The notes under the pieces were generated by a model. That model made no database searches, had not been told where the DNA came from, and was given only the letters and a program-made list of their open reading frames with translations. A stretch of DNA of 28,417 nucleotides from Macrostomum lignano (lineage: Eukaryota), in assembly GCA_002269645.1 (NCBI GenBank), contig NIVC01000987.1, positions 1-28,417 on the forward strand, written 5' to 3'. Positions 52 to 21,743 of this stretch are shown in pieces. How positions within the stretch are numbered: position 1 is the stretch's first letter; the number at the start of each line of letters is the position of its first letter. The position numbers and the translations under genes were made by a program.

Positions 52-400
<349 letters not shown>

Positions 401-499
401 AAAGAAGCATTAGCGAGAGAACAGTAAGGGAGTTGAGAACAGACGGTAGATGAGAGGGAAAATAGTAGATTAGAAAGTCAATTTGAGAGCTGAGAGAGT

Positions 500-897
500 A
501 GACTGACACAGAGTAGAGTAGACACAATAGACTCTAATAGTAGAGTAGACAGAGTAGACTATAGTAGACAGAGTAGATAGTATATTAGACAAAGTAGAGA
601 GCAGAGTAGACAGAGTAGAGAGCAGAGTAGGCAGATTAGAGAGCAGAGTAGACATAGTAGAGAGCAGAGTAGACAGAGTAGAGAGCAGAGTAGGCAGATT
701 AGAGAGCAGAGTAGGCAGATTAGAGAGCAGAGTAGACAGAGTAGAGAGCAGAGTAGGCAGAGTAGAGAGCAGAGTAGACATAGTAGAGAGCAGAGTAGGC
801 GGAGCAGAGAGCAGAGTAGAGAGCAGAGTAGACAGAGTAGAGAGCAGAGTAGACAGAGTAGAGAGCAGAGTAGACAGAGTAGAAAGCAGAGCAGAGA
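500..897. repeat. 21-bp minisatellite (AGAGAGCAGAGTAGACAGAGT)
   Basis: The 21-bp period is directly visible (GAGCAGAGT at 821 and 842) and degenerates toward the left; it gives the LSTLLST repeat ORF. Confidence 0.9.
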
Positions 898-1074: not shown

Positions 1075-1377
1075 TTAGTCCATCTCGCCGCCATCGAATC
1101 CCCGACTATAATCGTCTCGATCCGCATCAGCATGGCCATCTTCTTCGGCCTCTTCGCTGGAAATTCCAGCGCCGGAGAGAGTGTACAGGGCTCGGCCGAG
1201 CCACGACTGACGTCGCTGTGGCTGTTGCTGCTGCTGGCGACGGTCGTGCATGAAGTGCGACATTGGATCGCCCGGGTACGACGAGGCGCTGCCGCCTCCA
1301 ACGGCGCCGGCGCCGTCGCCAGATGAACGACCCTGGCGCTCCGTCTCGCTCACCGAGTAACCGCGCAGACGCTGGAA
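1075..1377 (-). CDS. Terminal coding exon of the BH3-only gene (FQRLRGYSVSE...RRQSWLGRALYTL...GEMD*)
   Basis: Acceptor ...ctcgctatgCAG|TTC at 1378/1377 follows a long pyrimidine tract. Phase 0 matches the upstream donor at 6154. It encodes 100 codons to TAA at 1077..1075. Confidence 0.8.
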   Translation of the reverse strand, partial: FQRLRGYSVSETERQGRSSGDGAGAVGGGSASSYPGDPMSHFMHDRRQQQQQPQRRQSWLGRALYTLSGAGISSEEAEEDGHADADRDDYSRGFDGGEMD

Positions 1378-4300
1378 CTGCATAGCGAGGGAGTGAGTGA
1401 GAGTGAGAGTGAGAGTGAGAGTCGGAGCGAGCGAGAGTGAGAGAGTGGAAGTGAGAGAGTGAGAGTGAGAGAGTAAGATTTAGACGGACAGAGTGAGAGA
1501 TGGAGAAAGCGAGTGACAGGAAGGAGCATAAATGTAGAGGCTGGACTAAAAAATGAAGCACGAGAATACTCGTAAAAGTTATACAAGGTTCTTATCTTAG
1601 TACCCAGAAACAAAATTTAAACAGATTCACAAACTTTTATCTGTCTAAAGCTCGCAACAGATTCACAAAAAAATTGTTAACCAAAAATTCATGTTCCTTT
1701 TTTATTACTTATAAGACACATGGCAAGTAGTATCATATGGAATTTCATAACGCACTATTAGTATTAGGCAAATCTTATCGCCAGGGTCCAGAGGTGGAAG
1801 TAGATTAAAAAAATTGCATTTCCAGGTAAGAATTTTGCACTACAGTCACGAGTTGGATTTATCAAAGCACTCTATAGAAGCTTTAACAGATTTAAACAAC
1901 ACGTATTGGACCCGTGCGCCGTGTGCCGAGGGTAGACTTCCATTGCACTTGACTTGCGCAGTGTTAAAAATCATCAGTCTCACTACAGATATGAAGCGCA
2001 GATACTTAGAATCAGGTGACTTAAATAACTATAAGATATACCACGTGAAGAGATTAGAGATCAGAACCATTTAGTTCTGGCTATACTATGCATACGCATA
2101 TATGCAAACTAAAATTGTCAAAAAGGCCATTTCCAAAAATAGACCCTGACGCCATGTCGCGAAGAGGGGGAGACCGGGCAAACGACAGGACACCCAGCTT
2201 AGCTGCTGTTTCCAGCGCAAACAAACTTTTATCCAGGGGCCAAGCACAGTCAGTCATCTTAGCTAAGATCAACAATTGAGACGCCAAATATACGCTCGTA
2301 CATTACGTTCGTTTATACAAAAAACATTTTGTTATTAAATTTAGAAGCAAGAATATACAGAACTACGCGTTGGTAACAGGTATGCATTTTTTTAGCGAAT
2401 CAACCTAATCACTGCTAGAGCACCCTGTGTGTCACCAATCACTGCTAGAGTTAATTCTCAGTGTCTTCAGATAAACATATTATACTTATAAATATTAATG
2501 TCACAATAGCCATAATCAAGAATTCAATAATTAATAAAGGACGCCAGGAACTTGTTTATTCACAAGTCTAAGAAAAGAACCCATGCTTATTCAAGTCTAT
2601 AAGCTACGAAATATTTTGGGTCAGCTGACTTCAGTCCAACCAGCCCACATATGGAATAAAAAATCAGCCAATGACAACGAAGGAGCAATGGAAGGTCAGT
2701 CATGCATTGGGAGAGAAATAGTGGGCGGGCGGTTTATCTCCCTCTCCCACTGGTTCCTGCAGTTCTTCTCTCTCTCTCAGCACGAAAAACCGCCACAATG
2801 TTGCACCGAATGAACTCCCCAATGCCACACATAGAATCCCGATACCGCATGTCTTTTTATACGTGTTTTTGATTAACTAAAAAAGTACGGGAAACTTCCA
2901 GTTTCTTAGAAGGTCAGTCGGGGGTTCGATTCTCGACCCACTAAGGAACAAATTGTGTCCTTGAGCAAGACGCTTAACTCTGCATTGCTTCAGTTCACCC
3001 AGCTGTAAAATGGGTGCCAGCATTAGCTGGGGTAGTTGAGGTAGCGCCGCACCTCAGGTCTGGTAAAGTTTAGAACCTGTAGGAAATTTGAGGGGTGGGG
3101 CCAACAAAGGCAATACTAAACCACCCCCCCCCCTGGTTTTTACCTTGAGCACTTGTAATAAAGCATTATTTTTTTAAATACCGAGTATAAAACAAAGTCA
3201 CGTGTCTCGCTGCTGAGGCGCTGAAGAGGTGGGGGTGGGCGCGAACCCTCCTCTCGCTCCTCTCTCTCCTACCACCCCTCACTCTCTTCCCCAATCGCTC
3301 ATTCATAAAAACAGGGCCAGTCTAGTATCTATCTCCCCTCTCCCTCTCTCTCGGCATAGCAACCCAATCAGAATACGAGTATACACAACTGCCGCAATCT
3401 CTTCATAAAAAAAGTATTCAGTATTAATATAGTCAATATTGCAAGGAATTAAACTAAATCCAGGCATTGGCACGTGACCGTGACATGCATGACAGGGTCG
3501 GGTTTAGTTTGGCAAGGGGAAGAGAAGCTGTGACGCATACTGTCTAACGTTGTCATCTTTCTTATCTTTATTAAAACAACTTCGTGTATGTCAGCCTCAT
3601 CATTCAATAAACACTTCTGTAGCAGGAGGAAACTCCGAATTCTGACCAATTAGGTCAATTTTATTACAGCACCGCTCTTTATGTTAAGATAATCTCACTC
3701 CTGTCTCAGGGTGAGTAGAAGATTCATATAATCTCACTCGTGTCTCAGGGTGAGAAAAGATTCTAATAATCTCACTCCCGTCTCAGGGTGAGTAGAAGAT
3801 TCTGATAATCTCACTCCTGTCTCAGGGTGAGAGAAGATTCTAATAATCTCACTCGTGTCTCAGGGTGAGAGAAGATTCGGATAATCTCATGCCTGATCTA
3901 TAGAAGAGGATTTTGAAGTTATCCTTCTAGAATATGAAGGCCCTAGATACTATTTGGGGCCCTGGATACTAAAAGAAGACTCCAGTTGATGAGAGTTTTT
4001 TATTTCCTGTTTTACGATTATTATTATTGCACATAAGAAGCATCGAATCGTGGAGGCATGTGAGGGCATCTGAGACGATGACCTTCACATGACCTTGAGC
4101 TGGAGCAATATTCTAATAATAATAAACAAAACTAAGTACGAGTTGAGACAAAGACCTACAGGGCCTGTTTTGATAAAAATTCAGCCTTGGCAACTGATAG
4201 TTGAGTGCACTGTACTCAAAACTGGACCTTTCATTTCAGGATTCTAAAATTGATTTTAGTCACGCTATATATACTAGTGCCAGGCTAAACTAAAATAAGC

Positions 4301-7300
4301 CTCAGGGTGAACTAAAATGAACCCCAGGCTAACCTAAAATGAACCTTAAGCTAACCTAAAAGGACTTCAGGCTAACAACCTAAAATGGATAAAATGGACC
4401 ACAAGCTAAACTACAATGAACTTCAGGCTAAACTAAATTGGACATCAGGCTAACCTAAAATGGACCTCAGGCTAACCTTAAATGGACCTCAGGCTAACCT
4501 TAAATGGACCTCAGACTAACCTTAAATGGACCTCAGGCTAACCTAAAATGGACCTCAGGCTAACCTTAAATGGACCTCAGGCTAACCTAAAATGGACCTC
4601 ACGCTAACCTTAAATGGACCTCAGGCTAACCTAAAATGGACCTCAGGCTAACCTAAAATGGACCTCAGGCTAACCTTAAATGGACCTCACGCTAACCTAA
4701 AATGGACCTCAGGCTAACCTTAAATGGACCTCAGGCTAACCTTAAATGGACCTCAGGCTAACCTAAAATGGACCTCAGACTAACCTTAAATGGACCTCAG
4801 GCTAACCTAAAATGGACCTCAGGCTAACCTTAAATGGACCTCAGGCTAACCTAAAATGGACCTCAGGCTAACCTTAAATGGACCTCAGGCTAACCTAAAA
4901 TGGACCTCAGGCTAACCTAAAATGGACCTCAGGCTAACCTTAAATGGACCTCAGGCTAACCTTAAATGGACCTCACGCTAACCTAAAATGGACCTCACGC
5001 TAACCTTAAATGGATCTCAGGCTAACCTAAAATGGACCTCAGGCTAACCTAAAATGGACCTCAGGCTAACCTTAAATGGACCTCAGGCTAACCTTAAATG
5101 GACCTCAGGCTAACCTAAAATGGACCTCAGGCTAACCTTAAATGGACCTCAGGCTAACCTAAAATGGACCTCAGGCTAACCTAAAATGGACCTCAGGCTA
5201 ACCTTAAATGGACCTCAGGCTAACCTAAAATAGACCTCAGGCTAACCTTAAATGGACCTCAGGCTAACCTTAAATGGACCTCAGACTAACCTTAAATGGA
5301 CCTCAGGCTAACCTTAAATGGACCTCAGGCTAACCTTAAATGGACCTCAGGCTAACCTAAAATGGACCTCAGGCTAACCTTAAATGGACCTCAGGCTAAC
5401 CTTAAATGGACCTCAGGCTAACCTAAAATAGACCTCAGGCTAACCTTAAATGGACCTCAGGCTAACCTTAAATGGACCTCAGACTAACCTTAAATGGACC
5501 TCAGGCTAACCTTAAATGGACCTCAGGCTAACCTTAAATGGACCTCAGGCTAACCTAAAATGGACCTCAGGCTAACCTTAAATGGACCTCAGGCTAACCT
5601 AAAATGGACCTCAGGCTAACCTAAAATGGACCTCAGGCTAACCTTAAATGGACCTCAGGCTAACCTTAAATGGACCTCACGCTAACCTAAAATGGACCTC
5701 ACGCTAACCTTAAATGGACCTCAGGCTAACCTAAAATGGACCTCAGGCTAACCTTAAATGGACCTCAGGCTAACCTTAAATGGACCTCAGGCTAACCTTA
5801 AATGGACCTCAGGCTAACCTAAAATGGACCTCAGGCTAACCTTAAATGGACCTCAGGCTAACCTTAAATGGACCTCACGCTAACCTAAAATGGACCTCAG
5901 GCTAACCTAAAATGGACCTCAGGCTAACCTTAAATGGACCTCAGGCTAACCTAAAATGGACCTCACGCTAACCTAAAATGGACCTCACGCTAACCTTAAA
6001 TGGACCTCAGGCTAACCTAAAATGGACCTCAGGCTAAACTAAAATGGACCTCAGGCTAAACTAAGCTACTAAAATAGACCTCAGAATACAATCATACTAA
6101 AGGAGAGAAATGAATATAATTTTTTAAGGAATTTTAGGTCTAAAAAAACTTACCACGAGAACTTCGCTGCGATTTTGCACAGACGACCTGCTGCTATCAA
6201 TCTCGTCACCAATGTGTCGAAGTCTCATAGCAACCATTTCGACGCTCTCTTCGCGTCGCATTTGCAGGCGCAACTGTTGAGCATCTTCAGGCATCACTGG
6301 CACAGACTGGCTGCGCACCCGGATGTCAACTACGGTGGTCTCCAGTAGAAGGTCTGGCAGCGGCTCCCGCTGGTTCAAAAGACTGCGAGCTGAGCAGAAT
6401 GGGGGGATTGTAGGTGGGGAATGAGTTAATCAAGAAATCCATAGCGGGTACTTATTAATAATTCATCTTCGGAATCTGTTAGAGAATATTACATTAAGGT
6501 CTTTTATTCAAATATATTGAGGTTTTTCCTTCAATTGATTGGGATCATTTCTTTGAATCGATCGGGATCATTTCTTTGAATCGATCGGGATCATTTCTTG
6601 GAATTGATTGGTATCATTTCTTGGAATTGATTGGGATCATTTCTTGGAATTGATTGGGATCATTTCTTGGAATTGATTGGGATCATTTCTTGGAATTGAT
6701 TAGGGTCATTTCTTGGAATTGATTAGGGTCATTTCTTGGAATTGATTAGGGTCATTTCTTGGAATTTATTAAAGTCATTTCTTGGAATTGATTAGGATTA
6801 TTTTTTGGAATTGATTAGGGTCATTTCTTGGAATTGATTAGGGTCATTTCTTGGAATCGATTAGGATTATTTCTTGGAATTGATTAGGGTCATTTCTTGG
6901 AATTGATTAAAATTATTTCTTGGAATTGATTAGGGTCATTTCTTGGAATTGATTGGGATCATTTCTGTGAATTTGATAATGCAATTTCTTAGAATCCGAT
7001 TAGTGAAATTTCTTAGAATCGATTGGGGTCATTTCTTAGATTTCAATTGATGCAATTTCTTAGAATCGATTGGGGTCATTTCATAGATTTCAATTGATAC
7101 AATTTCTTAGAATCGATTGGGGTGATTTTGACATTTTCTTAGAATCCGATTAGTGAAATTTCTTAGAATCGATTTGGGTTATTTCTAAGAATCTATTTGG
7201 ATCATTTTCTTAGAATACTATTTGGGTTATTTCTAAGAATCTATTTGGATCATTTTCTTAGAATACTATTTGGGTTATTTCTAAGAATCTATTTGGATCA

Positions 7301-10300
7301 TTTTCTTAGAATACGATTTGGGTTATTTCTAAGAATCTATTTGGATCATTTTCTTAGAATACGATTTGGGTTATTTCTAAAATTCTATTCGGATCATTTT
7401 CTTAGAATACTATTTGGGTTATTTCTAAGAATCTATTCGGATCATTTTCTTAGAATACTATTTGGGTTATTTCTAAGAATCTATTTGGATCATTTTCTTA
7501 GAATACGATTTGGGTTATTTCTAAGAATCTATTTGGATCATTTTCTTAGAATACGATTTGGGTTATTTCTAAAAATCTATTCGGATCATTTTCTTAGAAT
7601 ACTATTTGGGTTATTTCTAAGAATCTATTTGGATCATTTTCTTAGAATACGATTAGGGTTATTTCTAAGAATCTATTTGGATCATTTTCTTAGAATACGA
7701 TTTGGGTTATTTCTAAGAATCTATTTTGATAATTTTCTTAGAATACGATTTGGGTTATTTCTAAGAATCTATTTGGATCATTTTCTTAGAATACGATTTG
7801 GGTTATTTCTAAGAATCTATTTGGATCATTTTCTTAGAATACGATTTGGGTTATTTCTAAAAATCTATTCGGATCATTTTCTTAGAATACTATTTGGGTT
7901 ATTTCTAAGAATCTATTTGGATCATTTTCTTAGAATACGATTTGGGTTATTTCTAAGAATCTATTTGGATCATTTTCTTAGAATACGATTTGGGTTATTT
8001 CTAAGAATCTATTTGGATCATTTTCTTAGAATACGATTTGGGTTATTTCTAAAAATCTATTCGGATCATTTTCTTAGAATACTATTTGGGTTATTTCTAA
8101 GAATCTATTTTGATAATTTTCTTAGAATACGATTTGGGTTATTTCTAAGAATCTATTTGGATCATTTTCTTAGAATACGATTTGGGTTATTTCTAAGAAT
8201 CTATTTTGATAATTTTCTTAGAATACGATTTGGGTTATTTCTAAGAATCTATTTGGATCATTTTCTTAGAATCCAATTGGTGACATTTCTTAGAATCGAT
8301 TGGTGAAATTTCTTAGAATCGATTGGGGTCATTTCTTAAAATCTATTTGGATCATTTTCTTAGATTTCAATTGATGCAATTTCCTAAAACCAATCGAGAT
8401 CACATCTCGGGAGCCATAAACGAGAGGTCACATTTTTATCGCGGTCACCTTAACTTATCATCCATTGATTTGGGGTCAAATTTATGCTTAAAAATCACAG
8501 AATCCTACTATCTACCGCCCAAAAATTAACAAACATCAGCCATAATAACTGTTATAAACAATGTCGCAGTTATAACCATGTCAAGGTCACGATATAGTAT
8601 AACCCAAGATAGATAAAAGCTTTACTACATTGTTAAAACAAACATTGCTATTCGGCACGTTGGACAAAACTATAGGCCGCTCACTGTTTAGGAATTATAA
8701 CTACGTCTCAGTCTGGCTTTCTGTGTCTGCATTTCGAATTTCCCCCTCTCTCTCATCTCTTCTCTCCTTTTATCTCTAATATTCTCTCCCTCTCTCCTCT
8801 ATTCCTCTCCTCCCTCAACTGGCCCGCAGCCATGAGCTGGATTGTTTAGCAGGCCCTTGAGGTAAAGAATTTTAACAACCCGCAACGCTTTTAAATGAAG
8901 GGTCAGAGGGAGTTAAAACAAAGACGCTCCTGTCAACTTTGCTTCGCTTCTCTGTTATTTTATTTCATTTGCATATTTCCAACTGTCGTTCCAGTGCCGC
9001 CTATTCATAAACAGCTTAATCACGTGACCGGAGACGACCCCAGAGTGACACCTGCTTCTAGCTGAAATTTATTCAAAGCATTTATGAGTCTGCCTGCCTT
9101 TGTGCTCACTGCTTATACAAACAGACGCTATAGACAATGGTACTTACTCTGCTTACTCATGGAGATATAAGCTCTAGAACCAGTGTGATCTGGTAGCAAT
9201 TCCTCTGCACTACATCTAGTGACTCTGTGCCCTGTCTAGTGACTCTGCAATCCATCTAGTGACTCTGTGCCCTGTCTAGTGACTCTGCAATCCATCTAGT
9301 GACTCTGCCCTGTCTAGTGACTCTGCAATCCATCTAGTGACTCTGTGCCCTGTCTAGTGACTCTGCAATCCATCTAGTGACTCTGTGCCCTGTCTAGTGA
9401 CTCTGCAATCCATCTAGTGACTCTGTGCCCTGTCTAGTGACTCTGCAATCCATCTAGTGACTCTGTGCCCTGTCTAGTGAATCTGCAATCCATCTAGTGA
9501 CTCTGCAATCCATCTAGTGACTCTGTGCCCTGTCTAGTGACTCTGCAATCCATCTAGTGACTCTGTAATCCATCTAGTGACTCTGCACTCCATCTAGTGA
9601 CTCTGTGCCCTGTCTAGTGACTCTGCAATCCATCTAGTGACTCTGTACTCCATCTAGTAACTCTGTGAACCATCTAGTGACTCTGCACTCCATCTAGTGA
9701 CTCTGTACTCCATCTAGTAACTCTGTGAACCATCTAGTGACTCTGCAATCCATCTAGTGACTCTGCACTCCATCTAGTGACTCTGTGCCCTGTCTAGTGA
9801 CTCTGCAATCCATCTAGTGACTCTGTGCCCTGTCTAGTGACTCTGTACTCCATCTAGTGACTCTGCACTCCATCTAGTGACTCTGTGCCCTGTCTAGTGA
9901 CTCTGCAATCCATCTAGTGACTCTGTACTCCATCTAGTAACTCTGTGAACCATCTAGTGACTCTGCAATCCATCTAGTGACTCTGCACTCCATCTAGTGA
10001 CTCTGTACTCCATCTAGTGACTCTGTACTCCATCTAGTGACTCTGCACTCCATCTAGTGACTCTGTGCCCTGTCTAGTGACTCTGAAATCCATCTAGTGA
10101 CTCTGTACTCCATCTAGTAACTCTGTGAACCATCTAGTGACTCTGCAATCCATCTAGTGACTCTGCACTCCATCTAGTGACTCTGTACTCCATCTAGTGA
10201 CTCTGTACTCCATCTAGTGACTCTGTACTCCATCTAGTGACTCTGCACTCCATCTAGTGACTCTGTGCCCTGTCTAGTGACTCTGCAATCCATCTAGTGA

Positions 10301-13300
10301 CTCTGTACTCCATCTAGTAACTCTGTGAACCATCTAGTGACTCTGCAATCCATCTAGTGACTCTGCACTCCATCTAGTGACTCTGTACTCCATCTAGTAA
10401 CTCTGTGAACCATCTAGTGACTCTGCAATCCATCTAGTGACTCTGCACTCCATCTAGTGACTCTGTGCCCTGTCTAGTGACTCTGCAATCCATCTAGTGA
10501 CTCTGTGCCCTGTCTAGTGACTCTGTACTCCATCTAGTGACTCTGCACTCCATCTAGTGACTCTGTGAACCATCTAGTGACTCTGCAATCCATCTAGTGA
10601 CTCTGCACTCCATCTAGTGACTCTGTGCCCTGTCTAGTGACTCTGCAATCCATCTAGTGACTCTGTGCCCTGTCTAGTGACTCTGTACTCCATCTAGTGA
10701 CTCTGCACTCCATCTAGTGACTCTGTGCCCTGTCTAGTGACTCTGCAATCCATCTAGTGACTCTGTACTCCATCTAGTAACTCTGTGAACCATCTAGTGA
10801 CTCTGCAATCCATCTAGTGACTCTGCACTCCATCTAGTGACTCTGTGCCCTGTCTAGTGACTCTGCAATCCATCTAGTGACTCTGTGCCCTGTCTAGTGA
10901 CTCTGTACTCCATCTAGTGACTCTGCACTCCATCTAGTGACTCTGTGAACCATCTAGTGACTCTGCAATCCATCTAGTGACTCTGCACTCCATCTAGTGA
11001 CTCTGTGCCCTGTCTAGTGACTCTGCAATCCATCTAGTGACTCTGTGCCCTGTCTAGTGACTCTGTACTCCATCTAGTGACTCTGCACTCCATCTAGTGA
11101 CTCTGTGCCCTGTCTAGTGACTCTGCAATCCATCTAGTGACTCTGTACTCCATCTAGTAACTCTGTGAACCATCTAGTGACTCTGCACTCCATCTAGTGA
11201 CTCTGTACTCCATCTAGTAACTCTGTGAACCATCTAGTGACTCTGCACTCCATCTAGTGACTCTGTACTCCATCTAGTAACTCTGTGAACCATCTAGTGA
11301 CTCTGCAATCCATCTAGTGACTCTGCACTCCATCTAGTGACTCTGTGCCCTGTCTAGTGACTCTGTACTCCATCTAGTAACTCTGTGAACCATCTAGTGA
11401 CTCTGCAATCCATCTAGTGACTCTGCACTCCATCTAGTGACTCTGCAATTCATCTAGTGACTCTGCACTCCATCTAGTGACTCTGTGCCCTGTCTAGTGA
11501 CTCTGCAATCCATCTAGTAACTCTGCAATTCATCTAGTGACTCTGCACTCCATCTAGTAACTCTGCACTCCATCTAGTAACTCTGCAATCCATCTAGTGA
11601 CTCTGCACTCCATCTAGTAACTCTGCAATCCATCTAGTAACTATGTGAACCATCTAGTGACTCTGCACTCCATCTAGTAACTCTGCAATCCATCTAGTGA
11701 CTCTGCACACCATCTAGTGACTCTGCACTCCATCTAGTAACTCTGCAATCCATCTAGTGACTCTGCACTCCATCTAGTAACTCTGCAATCCATCTAGTAA
11801 CTATGTGAACCATCTAGTGACTCTGCACACCATCTAGTGACTCTGCACTCCATCTAGTACGAGCTAACTCTGCAATCCATCTAGTAACTCTGCAATCCAT
11901 CTAGTGACTCTGCACTCCATCTAGTGACTCTGCAATCCATCTAGTGACTCTGCAATCCATCTAGTAACTCTGTGAACCATCTAGTGACTCTGCACTCCAT
12001 CTAGTGACTCTGCACTCCATCTAGTGACTCTGCACTCCATCTAGTGACTCTGCACTCCATCTAGTGACTCTGCACTCCATCTAGTGACTCTGTTCCCTAT
12101 CTAGTGACTCTGTTCCCTATCTAGTGACTCTGTTCCCTATCTAGTGACTCTGTTCCCTATCTAGTCACCTCTTGTGCGCCCCTTGTGGCGCCCCTTGTGC
12201 GCGTTTAATTAGCTAACTAGTAACCAATTTATTAAAGAATTGCTGAATATTAATACTTACGATTGCACCTATTGCGCAGATACTTCAGACGACGAGTATT
12301 ACACGTACATATATACATATCGTAGAAAGCGATATTCCTAATGAGTCATTCAGTTTCACTATACTATATACACTGAAAGGTCTTTAGTCTAGACAATAAA
12401 ATAATAGTACTGCAGTACTAGATCCACACATTCATATTTACATAGCTGCACGGACACACGTTCAGCTAGCTGGTATTATTAATAAAATGGGAAAATTCGA
12501 AATATACGCTCCTATCAACGAACAACAGTGCAACAGTGAATATGCCCGTAGCCAAATAATTAATAGTACTACAGAGTCCCTTAACACCGTCTATATATGT
12601 ACGAGTAGACCAGACAAAGGGGTCGAAACAACTTTTTTTTACCTTAAAGCGCCTGAAAAATAATTAATCTATACCTCATGGATGCGGGCCAGATAAGAGA
12701 GAAAAATAGTTTGAATAGAGGAGAGAGAAATTAGAAAAGAAGGGATGAGTGATAGGAGAGAAGATATGAGATGAAATAAGGGATGAGAGAAGAGATGAGA
12801 GAGGAAGAGAGAGGGAAGAGAGAAGAGAAGCGGGTAGAGTAGAGAGGGGAGAGACAAGAGAGGAGAGGGGAGAGGGGAGAGAAGAGAGTAGTGGAGAGAG
12901 AAGAGAGTAGGGGAGAGAGAAGAGAGTAGGGGAGAGAACAGGGTAGAGAGGAGAGAGAAGAAGGTAAAGAGGAGAGAGGAGAGGTTAGAGAGGAGAGAGG
13001 AAAGAGGAAAGAGGAGGGAAGAGAGAAGAGACGAGAGAGGAGACAGGAGGGAAGAAAGAAGAGAGGAGAGAGTAGGGAGAAGAGAACAGGGGAGAGAGAA
13101 GAGAGGAGGGGAGAGAGAGAAGAGAGGAAAGGGGAGAGAAGAAAGGAGAGGAGAGAGAGAAGAGATTAGGGGGAGAAAGAGGGTAGAGAGGATTAGGGAG
13201 AGAGGAGAGAGTACAGGAGAGAGGAGAGAAAAGAGGGTAGAGAGAAGAGAGCTGAGAGAAGAGACATCAACCTTAAGCGGGCCAGATTCCTATTGTGAAA

Positions 13301-16300: not shown

Positions 16301-19300
16301 TTATGCCCTGCCACTCTTATTAGACAAGGTAATTAGTTTATACTATAAAAAAACTTATTAATAAATGGAAGACAAAAAACTCACAAGCTGACAACAAAGA
16401 TTCGCTATAATTATCTCCATTAGAAGTCGAATGTTCGAATACATCATCCGCATCGTCAGCTTCCGAATCTGATGATTCCAAGCCAAATATGACTTGTTGA
16501 TGCTGCTGTTGTTGATGCTGAGACGGCATTGCGAATGAAACACGGCCTGTTTTTAACCTATCCACCTGCCCAGTCAGTCCCGCATGCGAGACACAACATT
16601 TATATATATACACATGCGGAAAGGAAGAAGAGAGCGAAAAGAGTGGATAGAAAAGAAAATTTCTTAAATTGGCACAATGTCCAATAAATGTTCATTTTGA
16701 GACAGAAATAAAAGTAAAGGGTGGCGCCACTGGCCACGAGTGGTCAAGAGAGACCTGCTGCCTACCAAGAGAGAGAGAAAGGGGGGAGAGATTAAAAATA
16801 GAAAATTAGCTTTATTATATAAAGAATTTATACTTGATATTAATAATAAATTTTCATACTTATTCCATCAATTTTTCATAATTTTATTAAGATTACTGAA
16901 ATTTAAAAACTTGCTAAACAAAGGTTCGTTAACAACAGGTTGGGGGTTAGGGCTGGGGGTGTATAGTATAACCTTCAACGCTTGTCCACAAATTTCAAAT
17001 ATAGTTATGGCTTTCGCTAATAACCCTGGTCCCTGGATCCATCCAGGGGCAAAGCGGCCGCACGCGGTGCCCGGGTGCGCGGTGAATCCAAATCTATCTT
17101 GATAAACTTAACCTGCGATGACGTTAAACTGGACCCTGTTAAAAATAGAACAACCAGTTTTGACTACTACTAACTATATGTACGATTATGCGTAGTGCTT
17201 GCCTGTTTAGCGTTTTTGGTGTTGGCGAGGCCTTGACGAAATGTTTTAATTAATCATTTACTACAGCTTTCGACACCCCATTAGATTCCGAGATCTGACA
17301 CCCCCATTAGATTCCGAGACCTGACAGCCCCATTAGATTCCGAGATCTGACACCCCCATTAGATTCCGAGATCTGACACCTCATTAGATTCCGAGATCTG
17401 ACACCTCATTAGATTCCGAGATCTGACACCCCCATTAGATTCCGAGATCTGACACCCCCATTAGATTCCAAGATCTGACACCCCATTAGATTCCATTAGA
17501 TTCCGACATTATAGATTCCAAGATCTGACACCCCCATTAGATTCCGAGATCTGACAGCCCCATTAGATTCCGAGATCTGACACCCCCATTAGATTCCAAG
17601 ATCTGACAGCCCCATTAGATTCCGAGATCTGACACCCCCATTAGATTCCAAGATCTGACACCCCATTAGATTCCATTAGATTCCGACATTATAGATTCCA
17701 AGATCTGACACCCCCATTAGATTCCGAGATCTGACAGCCCCATTAGATTCCGAGATCTGACACCCCCATTAGATTCCAAGATCTGACACCCCATTAGATT
17801 CCATTAGATTCCGACATTATAGATTCCGAGACCTGACACCCCCATTAGATTCCGAGACCTGACACCCCCATTAGATTCCGAGATCTGATACCCCCATTAG
17901 ATTCCAAGATCTGACACCCCATTAGATTCCATTAGATTCCGACATTATAGATTCCGAGACCTGACACCCCCATTAGATTCCGAGATCTGACACCCCCATT
18001 AGATTCCGAGACCTGACACCCCCATTAGATTCCGAGAAACTACGCAAAAAGATTATAAGAACCCATTCTAACATGGATTCTAAACATGACCCCTGCAGCG
18101 GATAACAACATTGTCCTTAAAAAACTGACCTGTGCCTTGCCTTGTTAGGTTAAAAATTTACATGTGTAAAATGAAAATTACAAAACATCGGGTGAAGAGA
18201 GCGCGGCCTTAATTGCCTAAATGATGACATAATGAAGTGTAATGATTAATCTGTCAGTAGCAAAGGGCGTAGCCAGAGGGGGTGGAGGAAGGGGGCAAAA
18301 TGTCCCCACTTTAACATTAAGTAAAAAAATCAATTATGGATAGTGGATACGCTGTCTGGAATCATGATGGGAGACGGTGCATCCTTAGTGGTTCTTTCAT
18401 TCACACTACTGAATCATCTTATTTTCAACAGAGGCCCATCCATAAAAGTGCGTCAGCTCAGAAGGGGCTCATTTACATTACAAACCACCCCATTAAAACC
18501 TGTACACAGACTTGTACACATTTTAATGACCGAAAAGAAACTAAATTTGTTTTGACAATAATAATAAATAATAATACTACAATGAACGACAGGACAGACA
18601 AACAAGGACAAGATGACAAATAGGCGGCGATCGCGATCACAAATTTTGGGAACGCAGAGGCAATTAAATTGTCACGTGACCTAATAGGGTCTGGGCTAGA
18701 GGGGGGATGGGGCGGGGTGGCAAAATAGAATAGACACGATAGCCACCCCACTCCGGCCTCAATCCCCGCCCGAGTCGGGGCCGGCAATTTTCACACCAAA
18801 ACAGACAGCTCTAATGTACGGCGTGTGAATTTGTTAGATCTTTTATGGGGGCGGTGGGCGGCGGCGGGCGGCTATTTCTTTGAACAAAAATCAAAGAACA
18901 GAATAAAGTCTTAACCACGCCGTCCGCCGTAACTATTATTAAAGGGATCATCATTTACTTAAGATAAAAAGGCAAAAACATTTAAACATATTAGTTAGGA
19001 CTTAGGACTTGGATGTAAGGAGTAACTTAGTCAGGGTCAGAGGAGAGGCGATAAACAACACTCAACTGGTGCAGATGAACTAAAACTCCGTAAGCAAGCA
19101 AGCAATTATATATTTCGAAATCGAAAATAATCAACAATGAAAAGCAGCTCTAATAGCCATAATCTAAGAGCCGTTTTTAGATTAGACGCATGTCTAGACC
19201 ACAAAAAAGAATGACTATAATTAGAACCTGGCAAACCGGTCGGACAGACAGACAGACAGAGTAAACTGAGTGACAGAGCTGGCAATATGACTATTATACG

Positions 19301-21743
19301 GGTGTAGTGTATTCGTCACTTGTTTGTTTTTTGTCTTTCTTGTCAGATACTCGTAATAGGGCGTTAAGGCGTTGCCCCTGTGCCCCTGGCGCGTCCAACC
19401 CTCACACACACGCAGATTGCAAGAGCCTTATTATTTAGTTTATTAGTCTACCGAATCACGTGATAAAATCTATTTATAGTAAGTATGTCCCAACTAGGCT
19501 AGGGTCACCTTACAGGGCAACAAGTCTAGACAACTATAAATGACGCCGCTTATCTTACTTATTAGATACAAATATACATAATCATTCACAGGTTAGGCTA
19601 GCTCATTAGAGAACAAAAAAGCTCAATAACATTTAACTTGCACCCCCCAAAAAATAAGGTGCCGCAGTGTCCTCGAATTAAGGTGATATCTTAATTTCAA
19701 TTAACACTTTTTTGTAGGTGTAGAGGCAAGGCATTCTTATAGATTAAACCCGATATAAAATTTGTTATCAATTATTAACATGCATAAATTGTACCTGCCT
19801 ATACGTAATTTTGGGGCCTTGGGCTACACTTAATTAACAGTTTAGTTGTACTAATGCGTTGGTTAAAAAATTTAAAATAATTCGCTAATATAGTTAAGCC
19901 AGGTGCGTATGCACTGCTGTCAACACTACATTTTTATATGAAGGCTAACATTATCTATCACAGGTAAATGTCAAAATTATTAATCTACTGGAGACTGTGG
20001 AGAGTGCCAATGCCAAAATGGCACGGGGAGTGCCAGAATGAGACTGGGGGTGGAGTGCCAGAATGAGACTGGGTGGAGTGCCAGAATGAGACTGGGGGTG
20101 GAGTGCCAGAATGAGACTGGGGGTGGAGTGCCAGAATGAGACTGGGGGTGGAGTGCCAGAATGAGACTGGGTGGAGTGCCAGAATGAGACTAAGAGAGTG
20201 CCAGAATGATACTAGGGCCTAGGGGTGAGTACCAGAAGGTTCATAAACTCAGGGAGTGTCAGAATGAGACTTATAGTAGAGTCTATACTCTATAGAGTAT
20301 CAGGCCAGAATGCAAGAACCAGAATGGCACTATCTGTTCCAGAGTAATTATAATAATAAGTGCAGTATGAACTTTATTCAAACAAAAAGTACAATAAACA
20401 GAAGCTTTAAATGTAGCTTTAGATTTTTATGCCCCCGTTTTAGAATTTAGACTAATGCCAGATTGAAACACGAAATCGTAATTTTTCTGCATTCAAATTC
20501 TAAGAAGCCAAAAATGAAACCATCAATTAAAAAGTACCAAATGTACTTTATAAAATTCGTTTGTTAAAAGAAAAAAACGCACTCAGTGACCTTGCTGTCT
20601 TCCTTCCTTATCATACACATGAGCTGACCTAATTCTTGACCAAGACCAACCCCTCTCATTTCCACACTACAGGCCATAGAGATGTTTAAATGACACTCAA
20701 TTAAAAGTGCAAGCAAACAAATTTAATTAGGAAATATCGATAGAAAGAAGGAAGAAACCCCCGTGTCACGCGGTTGAACCGCTTTAACGTCATGTCATGT
20801 CACGTGATCAACATGTGAGTTGTGAGCATTCCTAGAATAGAGCCATAAAATGTTCCCCCGCCCCTAGTCAGCTCTTTCTCCTGTGCTCATGCTCATGTAC
20901 TTTTAGAATAGAAAATAATTAACCCAGAAACCTTAATAACTCACCACCCGAACGGGAGGCAGCAACGTAAGCAACTTCTCGATCTGCAGCAGAATTAGGG
21001 CCGCCTCCTAGAAGGCTTTGCTGGGCCTCGAGGTCTGCTGCTTCATCTGCTGCTGCTGCCTCTTCTGGCTCTGGCAGATCGGCCATGGGTACAGACGGCG
21101 GTCGATATGGATAATAATATTGATGATGATGATTCTGATAGTGCAGATGGTAGCCTGAGGCGAGATGAGGCGATAGCTGTCTCATTGTTGGAGCAGACGA
21201 TGACAGCATGACAGGCTGGGGACTAACAGGTCTAAAAGTGCCAGGCGGTGGCTGCTGCTGCTGCTGCTGTTGATGATGAAGCGGCGGTGGGCTAGGCAAT
21301 TGTAGTCGCAAATCTTCCATGCTCATTTGAAATTGCTCCTGCTGCTGTTGATCAGATGTTGATGTCCCAGCGGCTGCTGCTGCTAAGGCGGTGTTCATCA
21401 TCAGCGGTGAGTCAGTCTGATACCCGCTATCCATGCCGCCGCCGCCTCCGGCGCCGTGTCGACGACGCCTGGCATTATTATAATTGTAGCTATCCGGATT
21501 TGATACTGGCGTGCTCCATTCTAGCGGCGGACCCCGAGGACTAGTAGTGGCCTGGGTTGAGCCGCCGGCGCTGCCGCCACGACTGCCAATGCCAGCGTCA
21601 ACTGCGGCTGCTATTGGTAAACTGCCAGCGCTAGGACTGCCTCCGCTGCCGCTGGCACCGTCGCCAAGTTCAAATGTAACCTCGGAGTCCACATTTACCA
21701 GCATGTTGTTGTTTTCGTTGACGTTATTGTTATGATGCTCCAT
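1075..21743 (-). CDS. BAD: Spliced gene model: BH3-only pro-apoptotic Bcl-2 family protein, BAD-like; join(21743..20945, 6389..6154, 1377..1075), 445 aa
   Basis: The three GC-rich open exons join in frame through canonical GT-AG sites (799+236+303 = 1338 nt = 445 aa plus stop; phase 1 then phase 0). Motif order is RVRSQSVP, BH3 (VAMRLRHIGDEI), RLRGYS, RRQSWLGRAL, with no transmembrane tail, which parallels vertebrate BAD. The BH3-only call is well supported; BAD orthology (and the symbol) is inferred from motif order only. Confidence 0.65.
1389..1500. repeat. (GAGAGT)n hexamer repeat forming the polypyrimidine tract of the last intron
   Basis: It reads (CACTCT)n on the transcribed strand, immediately upstream of the acceptor at 1378. 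Confidence 0.85.
2915..3060 (+). mobile_element. 5'-truncated tRNA-derived CORE-SINE (MIR-like core)
   Basis: Pol III B-box GGTTCGATTC at 2923-2932 is followed by GTGTCCTTGAGCAAGACGCTTAAC...CTTCAGTTCACCCAGCTGTAAAATGGG. This aligns by eye with the MIR/CORE domain (GTGACCTTGGGCAAGTTACTTAAC...CTCAGTTTCCTCATCTGTAAAATGGG, recalled consensus). Confidence 0.75.
3690..3889. repeat. 38-39 bp minisatellite of imperfect palindromic units (5 full copies plus a partial)
   Basis: AATCTCAC starts at 3691, 3730, 3768, 3807, 3845 and 3883; each unit contains TCTCAC...GTGAG(A/T). Confidence 0.9.
4290..6085. repeat. 22-bp satellite (TGGACCTCAGGCTAACCT[A/T]AAA), about 80 copies
   Basis: Period 22 (TGGACCTC at 4461 and 4483), highly homogeneous centre with degenerate flanks; it ends about 70 bp from the exon 2 donor. 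Confidence 0.97.
6154..6389 (-). CDS. BH3-containing middle coding exon (ARSLLNQREP...IRVRSQSVP...VAMRLRHIGDEIDSSR...SEVLV)
   Basis: Acceptor ttctgctCAG|CT at 6390/6389 (phase 1) and donor GTG|GTAAGT at 6154/6153 (phase 0). LRHIGDEID at 6222..6196 fits the BH3 consensus h1-xxx-L-xx-h3-G-D-x-h4. Confidence 0.88.
6533..8385. repeat. Composite minisatellite: 23-bp monomer grading into a 48-bp dimer (2x24), rich in TTCN3GAA
   Basis: The 23-bp period is seen at 6541/6564. The 48-bp unit ATTTCTAAGAATCTATTTGGATCATTTTCTTAGAATACGATTTGGGTT runs about 7180-8270. Confidence 0.96.
9213..12165. repeat. 20-bp satellite (CATCTAGTGACTCTGCAATC and variants), about 148 copies with higher-order structure
   Basis: Register is unchanged from 9301 to about 11860; five recurring sequence variants are visible. 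Confidence 0.98.
12695..13265. repeat. Purine-only low-complexity tract (GA/GGA/GAA rich)
   Basis: About 570 bp almost exclusively A/G, with sparse T and C. Confidence 0.9.
13277..13353 (-). mobile_element. Terminus of a non-autonomous hAT (Charlie-like) DNA transposon
   Basis: The minus strand reads CAGGGGTTGGCAAACTCCGGCCCGTGGGCC from 13353, resembling hAT-Charlie ends (CAGGGGT..CAAACT followed by GGCCC motifs). The opposite end and 8-bp TSD were not convincingly found. Confidence 0.5.
13694..14782. repeat. Minisatellite: 67-bp trimeric unit grading into a 22-bp monomer (AATCGAGAATCCCATTATCCCG)
   Basis: AATCCCATGA occurs at 13701, 13768, 13835 and 13902 (period 67); the period is 22 from about 13950. 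Confidence 0.93.
15367..16257. repeat. 22-bp minisatellite (AAAATGGCACTCCCCAAACTGG), about 39 copies
   Basis: The period is directly visible; it explains several repetitive ORFs at 15385-16336. Confidence 0.96.
16385..16529 (-). CDS. Alternative coding exon of the BH3-only gene (MPSQHQQQQHQQVIFGLESSDSEADDADDVFEHSTSNGDNYSESLLSA)
   Basis: ATG at 16529 with a purine at -3, and a strong donor T|GTGAGT at 16385/16384 in phase 1, identical to the exon 1 donor phase and compatible with the 6389 acceptor. Composition (polyQ, acidic/Ser) resembles the other exons. It could instead start at a weak acceptor at 16546. Confidence 0.6.
16560..16625 (-). promoter_or_regulatory. Candidate TATA promoter for the alternative first exon
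   Basis: The minus strand has TATATATATAAA at 16610..16599 and an NRF1-like CGCATGCG at 16581-16588, about 70 nt upstream of the ATG at 16529. Confidence 0.35.
17272..18037. repeat. 26-bp minisatellite (CTGACACCCCCATTAGATTCCGAGAT) with a recurrent variant block
   Basis: Period 26 (17295 and 17321). The variant CCATTAGATTCCATTAGATTCCGACATTATAGATTCC recurs four times near 17481, 17661, 17789 and 17918. Confidence 0.95.
18660..18880. promoter_or_regulatory. Intronic CpG-rich GC-box/E-box cluster
   Basis: GTCACGTGAC at 18671-18680, GGGGCGGGG at 18709-18717, CCCCGCCC at 18764-18771 and GGGGCGGTGGGCGGCGGCGGGCGG near 18848. Confidence 0.4.
20027..20275. repeat. 23-25 bp minisatellite (GAGTGCCAGAATGAGACTGGGGGTG)
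   Basis: About 8 good copies and 2 degenerate copies. Confidence 0.9.
20945..21743 (-). CDS. First coding exon of the BH3-only gene (MEHHNNN...DSGYQTDSP...RPPSVP...ASRSG)
   Basis: Long GC-rich ORF with a strong Kozak context (aaaagATGg) and donor G|GTGAGT at 20945/20944 in phase 1 (799 nt). It encodes a Gly/Ala/Gln/Pro/His low-complexity, disordered-type sequence. Confidence 0.82.

What the first reader, a model, noticed from the sequence alone, without database searches (positions are those of the whole stretch)
6196..6321. Hybrid logic: BAD-type 14-3-3 switch attached to a Bim/Bik-type BH3 (IGDE, not MSDE)
Seen: RVRSQSVP (6321..6298) lies about 25 residues before LRHIGDEI. Established: vertebrate BAD has LRRMSDEF, whose Ser is a PKA site that blocks Bcl-xL binding and contributes to its selective binding, whereas Bim (LRRIGDEF) and Bik (LACIGDEM) have Gly there. 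Inference: this protein would be sequestered like BAD but lack the in-BH3 phospho-switch, and may bind more broadly or activate Bax/Bak directly. It could resemble an ancestral state before BAD/Bim specialisation.
Basis: partly seen in the sequence, partly recalled or inferred. Interest (0 to 1): 0.7.

Follow-up and report, generated by a model that had tools for sequence, protein, structure and literature searches.

The report
Candidate flatworm BH3-only death protein
The flagged stretch is a real exon of an unnamed gene of the flatworm Macrostomum lignano that carries a textbook "BH3" cell-death motif flanked by two survival-kinase/14-3-3-type phosphorylation motifs, so it is a good but untested candidate for a new invertebrate cell-death trigger, not a demonstrable relative of vertebrate BAD or Bim.

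Summary
Observation confirmed: on the minus strand 6321..6298 encodes RVRSQSVP, and 25 residues later 6222..6199 encodes LRHIGDEI. Both lie in one cleanly spliced exon (6389..6154) of a four-exon gene. The window is the first 28,417 nt of Macrostomum lignano contig NIVC01000987.1. The gene is the annotated "hypothetical protein" BOX15_Mlig026279g2 (445 aa; 499 aa with a cassette exon). Comparison with a ~90 %-identical second locus shows purifying selection (dN/dS 0.21, all exonic indels in multiples of 3).

The protein is predicted to be disordered, and the predicted helix with the highest local confidence covers the BH3. The BH3 fits a strict BH3 pattern (1 in 200,000 shuffles). The only PDB sequences it retrieves are BH3 peptides: PXT1 (E=0.0023) and BAX. 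RVRSQSV and a second site, RLRGYSV, are full RxRxxS-hydrophobic (Akt-type) motifs flanking the BH3 at -28 and +30 residues.

There is no Pfam match and no homologue among 1.84 billion representative proteins. "BAD/Bim ancestral hybrid" is therefore unsupported: Gly is the usual BH3 residue, and Bim is also reported as a 14-3-3 client.

Best reading: a lineage-specific BH3-only protein with convergent BAD-like gating. All function is inferred from motifs. Interest is moderate.

The parts
6154..6389 (-). Exon 3 (236 nt, enters in phase 1, ends in phase 0). It encodes ...RSLLNQREPLPDLLLETTVVDIRVRSQSVPVMPEDAQQLRLQMRREESVEMVAMRLRHIGDEIDSSRSSVQNRSEVLV and holds both motifs of the finding.
   Evidence: The splice sites are ttctgctcag|CT and GTG|gtaagt. 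The junctions are identical in annotated proteins P0001 and P0002. Against the second locus L001 there are no indels and 228/236 identical bases.
6298..6321 (-). RVRSQSVP: an RxRxxS-V basophilic-kinase (Akt/SGK/S6K/RSK-type) consensus merged with the 14-3-3 mode I motif RSxpSxP. The candidate phospho-Ser is S349 in the 499-aa model and S295 in P0002.
   Evidence: It is the only RSx[ST]xP in the six-frame translation of the window. It is identical in the paralogue P0001. Phosphorylation and 14-3-3 binding are inferred, not shown.
6190..6234 (-). BH3 motif VAMRLRHIGDEIDSS. The hydrophobic positions are h1 V373, h2 L377, h3 I380 and h4 I384, with small residues A374 and G381 and the conserved D382.
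   Evidence: It matches the strict PROSITE-type BH3 pattern (pattern recalled from memory) once in the window and in 1 of 200,000 shuffles. A PDB phmmer search returns only BH3 peptides: PXT1 at E=0.0023 and BAX at E=0.89. AF2 predicts a helix over exactly this stretch in both paralogues. The paralogue differs only at the exposed position H379S.
1075..1377 (-). Exon 4, the last coding exon, with stop codon TAA at 1077..1075. It encodes FQRLRGYSVSE...RRQSWLGRALYTLSGAG...acidic tail ...GGEMD*.
   Evidence: The acceptor is ctatgcag|TTC in phase 0. It is present in P0001 and P0002. The only indel against L001 is 18 nt, in frame.
1351..1371 (-). RLRGYSV: a second RxRxxS-V site (S407 in the model, S353 in P0002), 30 residues after L377. 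It is a possible second 14-3-3 anchor, although it lacks Pro at +2.
   Evidence: It is conserved in P0001. Function is inferred.
1177..1215 (-). RRQSWLGRALYTL: a PKA-type RRxS site (S457 in the model) followed directly by a short predicted amphipathic helix. It loosely recalls the Trp-rich C-terminal region of BAD.
   Evidence: AF2 predicts a helix at 405-412 of P0002. The stretch is identical in the paralogue. The resemblance to BAD is recalled from memory and is only a lead.
20945..21743 (-). Exon 1, with ATG at 21743 and donor GGTG|gtgagt in phase 1. It encodes 266 low-complexity, Gln/Gly/Ser/Pro-rich residues.
   Evidence: P0002 is 100 % identical and joins this exon directly to exon 3. 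Its indels against L001 are 3, 3 and 6 nt, and its dN/dS is 0.17.
16385..16546 (-). Exon 2, a probable cassette exon (162 nt, phase 1 to phase 1, 54 codons) encoding an acidic, Ser-rich stretch. It is included in the paralogue model P0001 and skipped in this locus's model P0002.
   Evidence: The acceptor (aaaaacag|GC) is weak. Its RVSFAMP is CVSLAMP in the paralogue, so it is not a conserved 14-3-3 site.

Best explanation
The finding lies in exon 3 of a real, selectively constrained Macrostomum lignano gene: BOX15_Mlig026279g2, 445 aa, or 499 aa with cassette exon 2. The gene encodes an intrinsically disordered, lineage-specific protein.

Its recognisable functional element is a canonical BH3 amphipathic helix (V373-A-M-R-L377-R-H-I380-G-D382-E-I384). 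I infer that this helix docks into the groove of the flatworm Bcl-2-like survival proteins and/or the effector Bak, the only proapoptotic BCL-2 member found in the four platyhelminths analysed so far. The protein would then be a pro-apoptotic BH3-only protein.

The BH3 is bracketed by two RxRxxS-Val sites: S349 in RVRSQSVP, which is also a perfect 14-3-3 mode I motif, and S407 in RLRGYSV. I infer the following mechanism:
- When a basophilic survival kinase (Akt/SGK/S6K-type) is active, one or both sites are phosphorylated.
- A 14-3-3 dimer then binds, possibly to both sites at once, and masks or sequesters the BH3.
- Loss of survival signalling frees the BH3.

There is no Ser inside the BH3, so the second, BAD-specific PKA lock is absent.

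Shown here: the exon, the gene model, purifying selection, the motif matches and their rarity, predicted disorder plus helix, and the absence of detectable homologues.

Inferred: Bcl-2/Bak binding, killing activity, phosphorylation, 14-3-3 binding, and convergent rather than inherited similarity to BAD.

My rough split: real gene 0.97; functional BH3 about 0.55; 14-3-3/kinase gating given a functional BH3 about 0.6.
For: Gene reality:
- The splice sites are consistent and the phases fit.
- Annotated proteins P0001 and P0002 use the same junctions.
- The window is 100 % identical to NIVC01000987.1.
- Exonic indels against the second locus are all multiples of 3, and dN/dS is 0.21 (27.5 synonymous against 19.5 non-synonymous changes).

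BH3:
- A strict-pattern match, unique in the window, seen in 5e-6 of shuffles.
- The PDB search returns only BH3 peptides: PXT1 at E=0.0023 and BAX at E=0.89.
- 10 of 14 core residues are identical to the PXT1 BH3. PXT1's L82, L86, I89, D91 and I93 contact the Bak groove (PMC10298792), and these align with V373, L377, I380, D382 and I384.
- AF2 predicts general disorder (mean pLDDT 40.7). The longest helix and the top local pLDDT of P0002 fall at residues 316-333, which is the BH3. The paralogue again has a helix over the BH3.
- There is no BH1/BH2 or any other Pfam domain.
- The BH3 sits on a single exon, as the literature reports for the echinoderm BH3-only candidates it examined (PMC8998228).

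Gating:
- RVRSQSVP is RxRxxS-hydrophobic plus RSxSxP, and RLRGYSV lies on the other side. The flanking pair arises in 3.5e-5 of shuffles.
- Both sites are identical in the paralogue.

Context:
- Flatworms run a tripartite Bcl-2 / Bak / BH3-only pathway (PMC8998228, PMC7022251, PMC11463336).
- 14-3-3 sequestration of Bad after AKT signalling is the textbook precedent (PMC6193947).
Against: - Everything functional rests on short linear motifs chosen post hoc, and BH3-like motifs are notorious for false positives.
- The PDB E-values are marginal.
- The AF2 models are low-confidence single-sequence predictions. In P0001 a poly-Q helix scores higher than the BH3 helix.
- Conservation was tested only against copies 90-99 % identical, which barely discriminates the motifs from their surroundings.
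- No orthologue from another species was found, so deep conservation of the motifs is untested.
- The protein is much longer (445-499 aa) and more low-complexity than classical BH3-only proteins. It lacks a membrane anchor.
- I could not verify the Bcl-2, Bak, Akt or 14-3-3 genes of M. lignano with these tools.
- The second site lacks Pro at +2.
Confidence: 0.45

Rival explanations
1. The BH3 look-alike is incidental. The gene encodes a disordered, poly-Q/Ser-rich, lineage-specific protein, such as a signalling scaffold or transcriptional co-regulator. The amphipathic helix binds some other partner. The RxRSxSxP site, if used, regulates that other function.
For: - There is no homologue and no domain.
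- The protein is long and low-complexity, unlike classical BH3-only proteins.
- A loose BH3 pattern arises in 0.4 % of shuffles and RSxSxP in 4.9 %.
- Validated non-functional BH3-like motifs exist, for example ApoL2 (PMC4611713, title listed).
Against: - The match is to the strict 15-residue pattern (5e-6 of shuffles), not only to the loose one.
- All PDB hits are BH3 peptides.
- The helix coincides with the motif.
- Two of the protein's seven Ile occupy h3 and h4.
- The joint arrangement with flanking kinase sites is rare.
Confidence: 0.3
2. It is a functional BH3-only protein, but without BAD-like 14-3-3 gating. On this reading the RxRxxS sites are unused or serve another purpose such as stability or localisation, and control is mainly transcriptional or by alternative splicing of exon 2.
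For: - Many RSxSxP and RxRxxS motifs are not used.
- The second site lacks Pro at +2.
- A cassette exon differs between the annotated models.
- Most BH3-only proteins are controlled transcriptionally (established knowledge).
Against: - RVRSQSVP is a perfect composite Akt plus mode I motif in a disordered region.
- A second matching site lies symmetrically on the other side of the BH3 (3.5e-5 of shuffles).
- Both sites are conserved in the paralogue.
Confidence: 0.17
3. One reading: a true orthologue or ancestral-like relative of the vertebrate BAD/Bim lineage that preserves a pre-specialisation state.
For: - It has the same RxRSxSxP-then-BH3 order as BAD and an IGDE core as in Bim and Bik.
- The BH3 is in the penultimate coding exon.
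- There are loose echoes of BAD's C-terminus (RRQSW plus a helix) and of Bim's STQT stretch (STQATTSP in exon 1). Both are recalled from memory.
Against: - There is no Pfam BAD, Bim or Bmf match.
- No homologue was found among 1.84e9 representatives.
- The BAD BH3 is the least similar of those compared, at 4/14.
- The spacing differs: about 28 residues from the phospho-Ser to the BH3 Leu here, against about 15 in BAD.
- The literature regards BH3-only proteins as polyphyletic. Searches seeded with the schistosome and nematode BH3-only sequences found no homologues in the other protostome branch (PMC8998228, PMC11463336).
Confidence: 0.06
4. Not a gene feature at all: a chance open frame or a pseudogene.
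For: None beyond the repeat-rich surroundings.
Against: - Annotated models share the junctions.
- Indels are in frame and dN/dS is 0.21.
- The frame is intact in three genomic copies.
Confidence: 0.02

Closest known systems
Vertebrate BAD (Bcl-2_BAD, Pfam PF10514)
   Same: A disordered BH3-only protein with no membrane anchor. It has an RxRSxSxP Akt/14-3-3 site N-terminal to the BH3, and further basophilic sites near the BH3. The predicted logic is the same: a survival kinase leads to 14-3-3 binding, which hides the BH3.
   Different: There is no detectable sequence homology. The BH3 has Gly where BAD has the PKA-site Ser, and the BAD BH3 core is the least similar of those compared (4/14). Here one site lies on each side of the BH3, whereas BAD has two upstream. 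The protein is three times longer.
PXT1 BH3 (human peroxisomal testis-specific protein 1; PDB 8GSV, 7WJH)
   Same: The closest BH3 by sequence: LAMQLRHIGDNID against VAMRLRHIGDEID, 10/14 in the core and E=0.0023. All five groove-contacting consensus residues correspond. PXT1 directly activates Bak (PMC10298792), and Bak was the only proapoptotic BCL-2 member found in the four platyhelminths analysed (PMC11463336).
   Different: The similarity is confined to about 20 residues. PXT1 is a small mammalian testis protein, so the likeness is presumably convergent. The I78 and I79 contacts of PXT1 correspond to S369 and V370 here.
Bim, Bik and Bax BH3 motifs
   Same: An I-G-D-E core with h1-h4 hydrophobics. 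Bim is also reported as an Akt target and 14-3-3 client (Qi 2006, cited in PMC6193947). The BAX BH3 peptide was the only other PDB hit.
   Different: There is no Pfam match to the Bim, Bmf or Bik families. There is no C-terminal hydrophobic anchor, because the C-terminus is acidic. There is no canonical TQT dynein-light-chain motif. There are no BH1/BH2 motifs, so it is not a Bax-like multidomain protein.
Schistosome BH3-only proteins (Lee et al. 2011 PNAS), with BH3-only components also reported in planarian genomes
   Same: The same phylum, and the same proposed role in a tripartite Bcl-2 / Bak / BH3-only pathway (PMC8998228, PMC7022251).
   Different: I could not compare sequences, because the paper is not held. 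HMMER found no relative of the Macrostomum protein in any other species. No kinase or 14-3-3 gating was mentioned for the schistosome proteins in the reviews I read (PMC8998228, PMC7022251).

Membership tests
BH3-only proteins (functional class defined by a BH3 short linear motif) | BH3 consensus: h1-small-x-x-L-x-x-h3-[G/A/S]-D-x-h4 | tested here: met
   VAMRLRHIGDEI fits. It also fits the stricter 15-residue PROSITE-type pattern (recalled from memory). It is unique in the six-frame window and appears in 5e-6 of shuffles.
BH3-only proteins (functional class defined by a BH3 short linear motif) | No other BH motifs and no Bcl-2 fold | tested here: met
   No Pfam family at E<=10 for the full 499-aa model. 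AF2 predicts no globular domain.
BH3-only proteins (functional class defined by a BH3 short linear motif) | Intrinsically disordered, with a helix-prone BH3 | tested here: met
   Mean pLDDT is 40.7. The helix at 316-333 of P0002 is the BH3, with the highest local pLDDT of 54-62. A helix at 105-121 of P0001 also covers the BH3. These are low-confidence single-sequence models.
BH3-only proteins (functional class defined by a BH3 short linear motif) | The BH3 binds the groove of Bcl-2-family proteins, and killing depends on the conserved Leu and Asp | not testable with these tools
   This needs peptide binding assays and cell-death assays.
BH3-only proteins (functional class defined by a BH3 short linear motif) | The host organism encodes multidomain Bcl-2 partners | not tested
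   The literature shows BAK plus BCL-2-like genes in other platyhelminths (PMC11463336, PMC8998228). The M. lignano genes could not be searched here.
BAD family (Pfam PF10514) | Sequence similarity to the family profile, or to any BAD homologue | tested here: not met
   No Pfam hit. HMMER against 1.84e9 representatives found only the query itself.
BAD family (Pfam PF10514) | A phosphorylatable Ser inside the BH3 (LRRMSDEF) | tested here: not met
   The position is Gly381 (LRHIGDEI).
BAD family (Pfam PF10514) | An RxRSxSxP Akt/14-3-3 site upstream of the BH3 | tested here: met
   RVRSQSVP at 6321..6298, with S349 lying 28 residues before L377. This is met at the motif level only.
Bim/Bmf families (Pfam Bclx_interact, Bim_N, BMF) | A profile match, a dynein-light-chain TQT motif, and (for Bim) a C-terminal hydrophobic anchor | tested here: not met
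   No Pfam hit. Only STQATT is present, not TQT. The C-terminus is acidic...DYSRGFDGGEMD.
14-3-3 clients (mode I) | An R-S-x-pS/pT-x-P motif in a disordered region | tested here: met
   RSQSVP is the single occurrence in the window. It lies in a region with pLDDT below 50.
14-3-3 clients (mode I) | Phosphorylation-dependent binding to 14-3-3 | not testable with these tools
   This needs a kinase assay and a pull-down with S349A and S407A mutants.

The most novel reading that the evidence does not exclude
A Macrostomum-specific BH3-only protein evolved, independently of vertebrate BAD, a survival-kinase/14-3-3 clamp made of two Akt-type sites bracketing the BH3. Its PXT1-like BH3 directly activates Bak, the effector reported for other flatworms. 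That would make a one-protein link from nutrient or growth-factor (PI3K-Akt) signalling to mitochondrial cell death in a regenerating, degrowing flatworm. It would be a case of convergent evolution of the BAD logic.
Probability: 0.25. Interest if true: 0.6.

Novelty: new member of a known kind. Interest (0 to 1): 0.4.

Why it matters
Few invertebrate BH3-only proteins are known, such as C. elegans EGL-1, Hydra candidates and schistosome proteins. Whether survival-kinase control of BH3-only proteins exists outside vertebrates is, as far as I know, unsettled. M. lignano is a laboratory flatworm with RNAi and transgenesis (my own knowledge). Apoptosis matters there for stem-cell turnover, regeneration and starvation-induced shrinkage.

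A validated BH3-only protein with a built-in Akt/14-3-3 gate would show one of two things. Either this regulatory logic is older than BAD, or, more likely given the lack of homology, it is easily reinvented from short linear motifs. It would also give a handle for manipulating cell death in this model.

If the motifs prove non-functional, it becomes one more example of a BH3 look-alike.

Tried and rejected
- Pfam scans of the exon peptide, the C-terminal half and the full model gave only sub-threshold noise (AIMA-like_N, CHD1-like_C), rejected as chance.
I used the annotated paralogue P0001 instead. It found only itself among 1.84e9 representatives.
- The third homologous-protein search, on the exon 3 peptide, returned 'no candidate' even though P0001 and P0002 contain that peptide. 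One search had also missed P0002. The word index is therefore incomplete, and 'no close homologue' from that tool is weak evidence.
- A PDB search with the 14-3-3-site stretch found nothing.
- Lee 2011 (PMC3084110) and Bender 2012 (PMC3324028) are not held, so I could not compare with the schistosome and planarian BH3-only sequences.
- The supplement of PMC11463336 is not held. No paper mentions Mlig023455. The papers that mention M. lignano together with Bcl-2 were not examined for the species' Bcl-2 genes.
- RVSFAMP in exon 2 was considered as a second BAD-like site and rejected. It is CVSLAMP in the paralogue and lies in a cassette exon that this locus's annotated model skips.
- A multidomain Bax-like protein was considered because of the BAX BH3 hit. 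I rejected it: there are no BH1/BH2 motifs, no Bcl-2 Pfam hit and no fold.
- A nuclear export signal reading of the helix was rejected, because Asp falls at the last hydrophobic position (by inspection).
- The antisense ORF 6175..6348 (+) and the out-of-frame ATG ORF 6442..6326 (-) have no support.
- Rfam and tRNA scans of the window were empty.
- I did not run a Foldseek search, because the models are too low in confidence to be meaningful.
Full report
**1. What is in the sequence**

The window is eukaryotic. It has about 42 % GC, GT-AG introns and very many minisatellite arrays.

- On the minus strand, 6321..6298 translates to RVRSQSVP.
- In the same frame, 6222..6199 gives LRHIGDEI, with 25 residues in between.
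- Both lie in an open frame bounded by a strong acceptor (ttctgctcag|CT, exon start 6389) and a strong donor (GTG|gtaagt, exon end 6154).

**2. Gene and organism**

From splice sites and reading phases I assembled a four-exon minus-strand model:

| Exon | Coordinates |
|---|---|
| e1 | 21743..20945 |
| e2 | 16546..16385 |
| e3 | 6389..6154 |
| e4 | 1377..1075 |

The model is 1,500 nt and encodes 499 aa.

Protein searches then found two annotated Macrostomum lignano proteins.

- P0001 (BOX15_Mlig023455g1, partial, 240 aa) is 92 % identical and uses the e2-e3-e4 junctions.
- P0002 (BOX15_Mlig026279g2, 445 aa, 'hypothetical protein') is 100 % identical to e1+e3+e4 and skips e2.

The window is 100 % identical over its full length to the start of contig NIVC01000987.1 of assembly GCA_002269645.1. 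A second contig carries a copy about 99 % identical. A third locus (L001, NIVC01000032.1) is about 90 % identical. Exon 2 (162 nt, phase 1 to phase 1) is thus a probable cassette exon.

Comparison with L001 supports a real gene.

- Every exonic indel is a multiple of 3 (3, 3, 6, 15 and 18 nt), and the splice sites are conserved.
- The Nei-Gojobori dN/dS is 0.21 (27.5 synonymous against 19.5 non-synonymous changes).

This is a real gene under purifying selection, not a chance frame.

**3. The protein**

- No Pfam family matches the whole model, including the BAD, Bim, Bmf, Bik and Bcl-2 families.
- An exhaustive HMMER search of 1.84 billion representative proteins with P0001 found only P0001 itself.
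- AlphaFold2, run on single sequences, predicts a disordered chain with mean pLDDT 40.7.
- The longest helix and the highest local confidence of P0002 are at residues 316-333. This is exactly the BH3, V319-I330 in P0002 numbering.
- In the paralogue a helix at 105-121 again covers the BH3.
- A second short helix, LGRALYTL, follows RRQSW.

**4. Is it a BH3?**

VAMRLRHIGDEIDSS has hydrophobic residues at h1-h4 (V, L, I, I), small residues after h1 and h3 (A, G) and the conserved Asp.

- It fits the strict 15-residue PROSITE-type BH3 pattern, which I recalled from memory.
- That pattern occurs once in the six-frame translation of the window and in 1 of 200,000 composition-preserving shuffles of the protein.
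- A phmmer search of all PDB sequences with the 28-residue stretch returned three sequences, and all are BH3 peptides. Two are PXT1 peptides (E=0.0023 and 0.0038) and one is the BAX BH3 (E=0.89).
- The 14-residue core is identical to PXT1 at 10 positions, to BAX and BIK at 8, to BIM at 7 and to BAD at 4.
- The PXT1 residues that contact the Bak groove (L82, L86, I89, D91, I93; PMC10298792) align with V373, L377, I380, D382 and I384.
- The paralogue differs within the motif only at the exposed position (H379S).

**5. The kinase and 14-3-3 motifs**

RVRSQSVP combines RxRxxS-hydrophobic (Akt, SGK, S6K or RSK type) with the 14-3-3 mode I motif RSxpSxP. This is the same RxRSxSxP architecture as the BAD Ser136 site (established knowledge).

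It lies 30 residues after the BH3 Leu, while S349 lies 28 residues before it.

- Two such sites bracketing a fixed point within 35 residues arise in 3.5e-5 of shuffles.
- A loose BH3 with RSxSxP no more than 45 residues upstream arises in 1.5e-5 of shuffles.
- Both sites, and an RRQSW (PKA-type) site, are identical in the paralogue.

**6. Most likely mechanism (inferred)**

I read this as a disordered BH3-only protein.

- Its helix docks into flatworm Bcl-2-like proteins and/or Bak.
- When a basophilic survival kinase is active, phosphorylation of S349, and possibly S407, recruits a 14-3-3 dimer that masks or sequesters the BH3.
- Loss of signalling releases the BH3.

Flatworms are reported to use a tripartite Bcl-2 / Bak / BH3-only system. 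In the four platyhelminths analysed, Bak was the only proapoptotic BCL-2 member found (PMC8998228, PMC7022251, PMC11463336). This makes the resemblance to the Bak-activating PXT1 BH3 suggestive, but it remains untested.

**7.

The motif-level part holds: a Gly-type BH3 together with a BAD-like 14-3-3 site. The evolutionary part does not.

- There is no detectable homology to BAD or Bim.
- The literature considers BH3-only proteins polyphyletic. Among fishes it reports a Bad homologue in coelacanths (PMC8998228, PMC11463336).
- Gly is the normal BH3 residue, and BAD's Ser is the oddity.
- 14-3-3 binding is also reported for Bim (PMC6193947).

Convergent assembly of short linear motifs in a lineage-specific disordered protein is the more economical reading.

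**8. Limits**

- All function is inferred from motifs, which were selected post hoc.
- Conservation was tested only among copies 90-99 % identical.
- The structure models are low-confidence.
- I could not inspect the M. lignano Bcl-2, Bak, Akt or 14-3-3 genes, nor the schistosome BH3-only sequences.
- The word-index homologue tool behaved inconsistently.

**9. Verdict**

This is a credible, previously unannotated candidate BH3-only protein of M. lignano with predicted BAD-like gating. I classify it as a new member of a known kind, of moderate interest (0.4). It is readily testable by peptide binding, 14-3-3 pull-down and RNAi in a tractable flatworm.

Noticed in passing
window 4392-6059 and 6533-8383: The BH3 exon is sandwiched between two large minisatellite arrays that start within about 100-150 bp of its splice sites. 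One is a 22-bp unit repeated about 76 times. The other is a 23/48/72-bp array of about 1.8 kb. The same repeat families flank the exon in the second locus L001.
   Followed up: partly
window 9203-12152; introns 1378-6153, 6390-16384, 16547-20944: Tandem repeats make up 43 %, 73 % and 21 % of the three introns, including a 20-bp unit repeated about 147 times. The gene spans 20.7 kb for 1.3-1.5 kb of coding sequence.
   Followed up: partly
window 16385-16546 (-): Exon 2 behaves as an in-frame cassette. It is included in the paralogue's annotated model (P0001) and skipped in this locus's model (P0002). It encodes an acidic, Ser-rich stretch (SSDSEADDADD, CK2-like). Its acceptor is weak and has a 3-nt indel in the paralogue.
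   Followed up: partly
window 21537-21560 (-), residues 62-69: STQATTSP in exon 1 loosely recalls the dynein-light-chain-binding stretch of Bim (KSTQTPSP, recalled from memory). It lacks the canonical TQT. It is identical in the paralogue.
   Followed up: no
window 6241-6258 (-), residues 365-370: RREESV places a Ser (S369, with Arg at -3 and -4) four residues before h1 of the BH3. This corresponds to a groove-contacting position in PXT1 (I78). It is a possible alternative phospho-switch at the edge of the BH3, but this is pure inference.
   Followed up: no
window 1177-1215 (-): RRQSWLGRALYTL is a PKA-type site followed directly by a short predicted amphipathic helix. It is reminiscent of the Trp-rich lipid-binding C-terminus of BAD (recalled from memory). 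It is conserved in the paralogue.
   Followed up: no
whole window versus L002/L003 and L001: Three genomic copies of the locus exist in the assembly. Two are about 99 % identical, on separate contigs, and encode the same protein. The third is about 90 % identical. This is consistent with the duplicated, polyploid-like genome described for M. lignano (my own knowledge).
   Followed up: partly
window 53-895: A long (AG)n tract and 21/42/63-bp AG-rich repeats lie just downstream of the gene's stop codon, in the probable 3' UTR or flank. They give an extreme GC and AT skew in the first kilobase.
   Followed up: no
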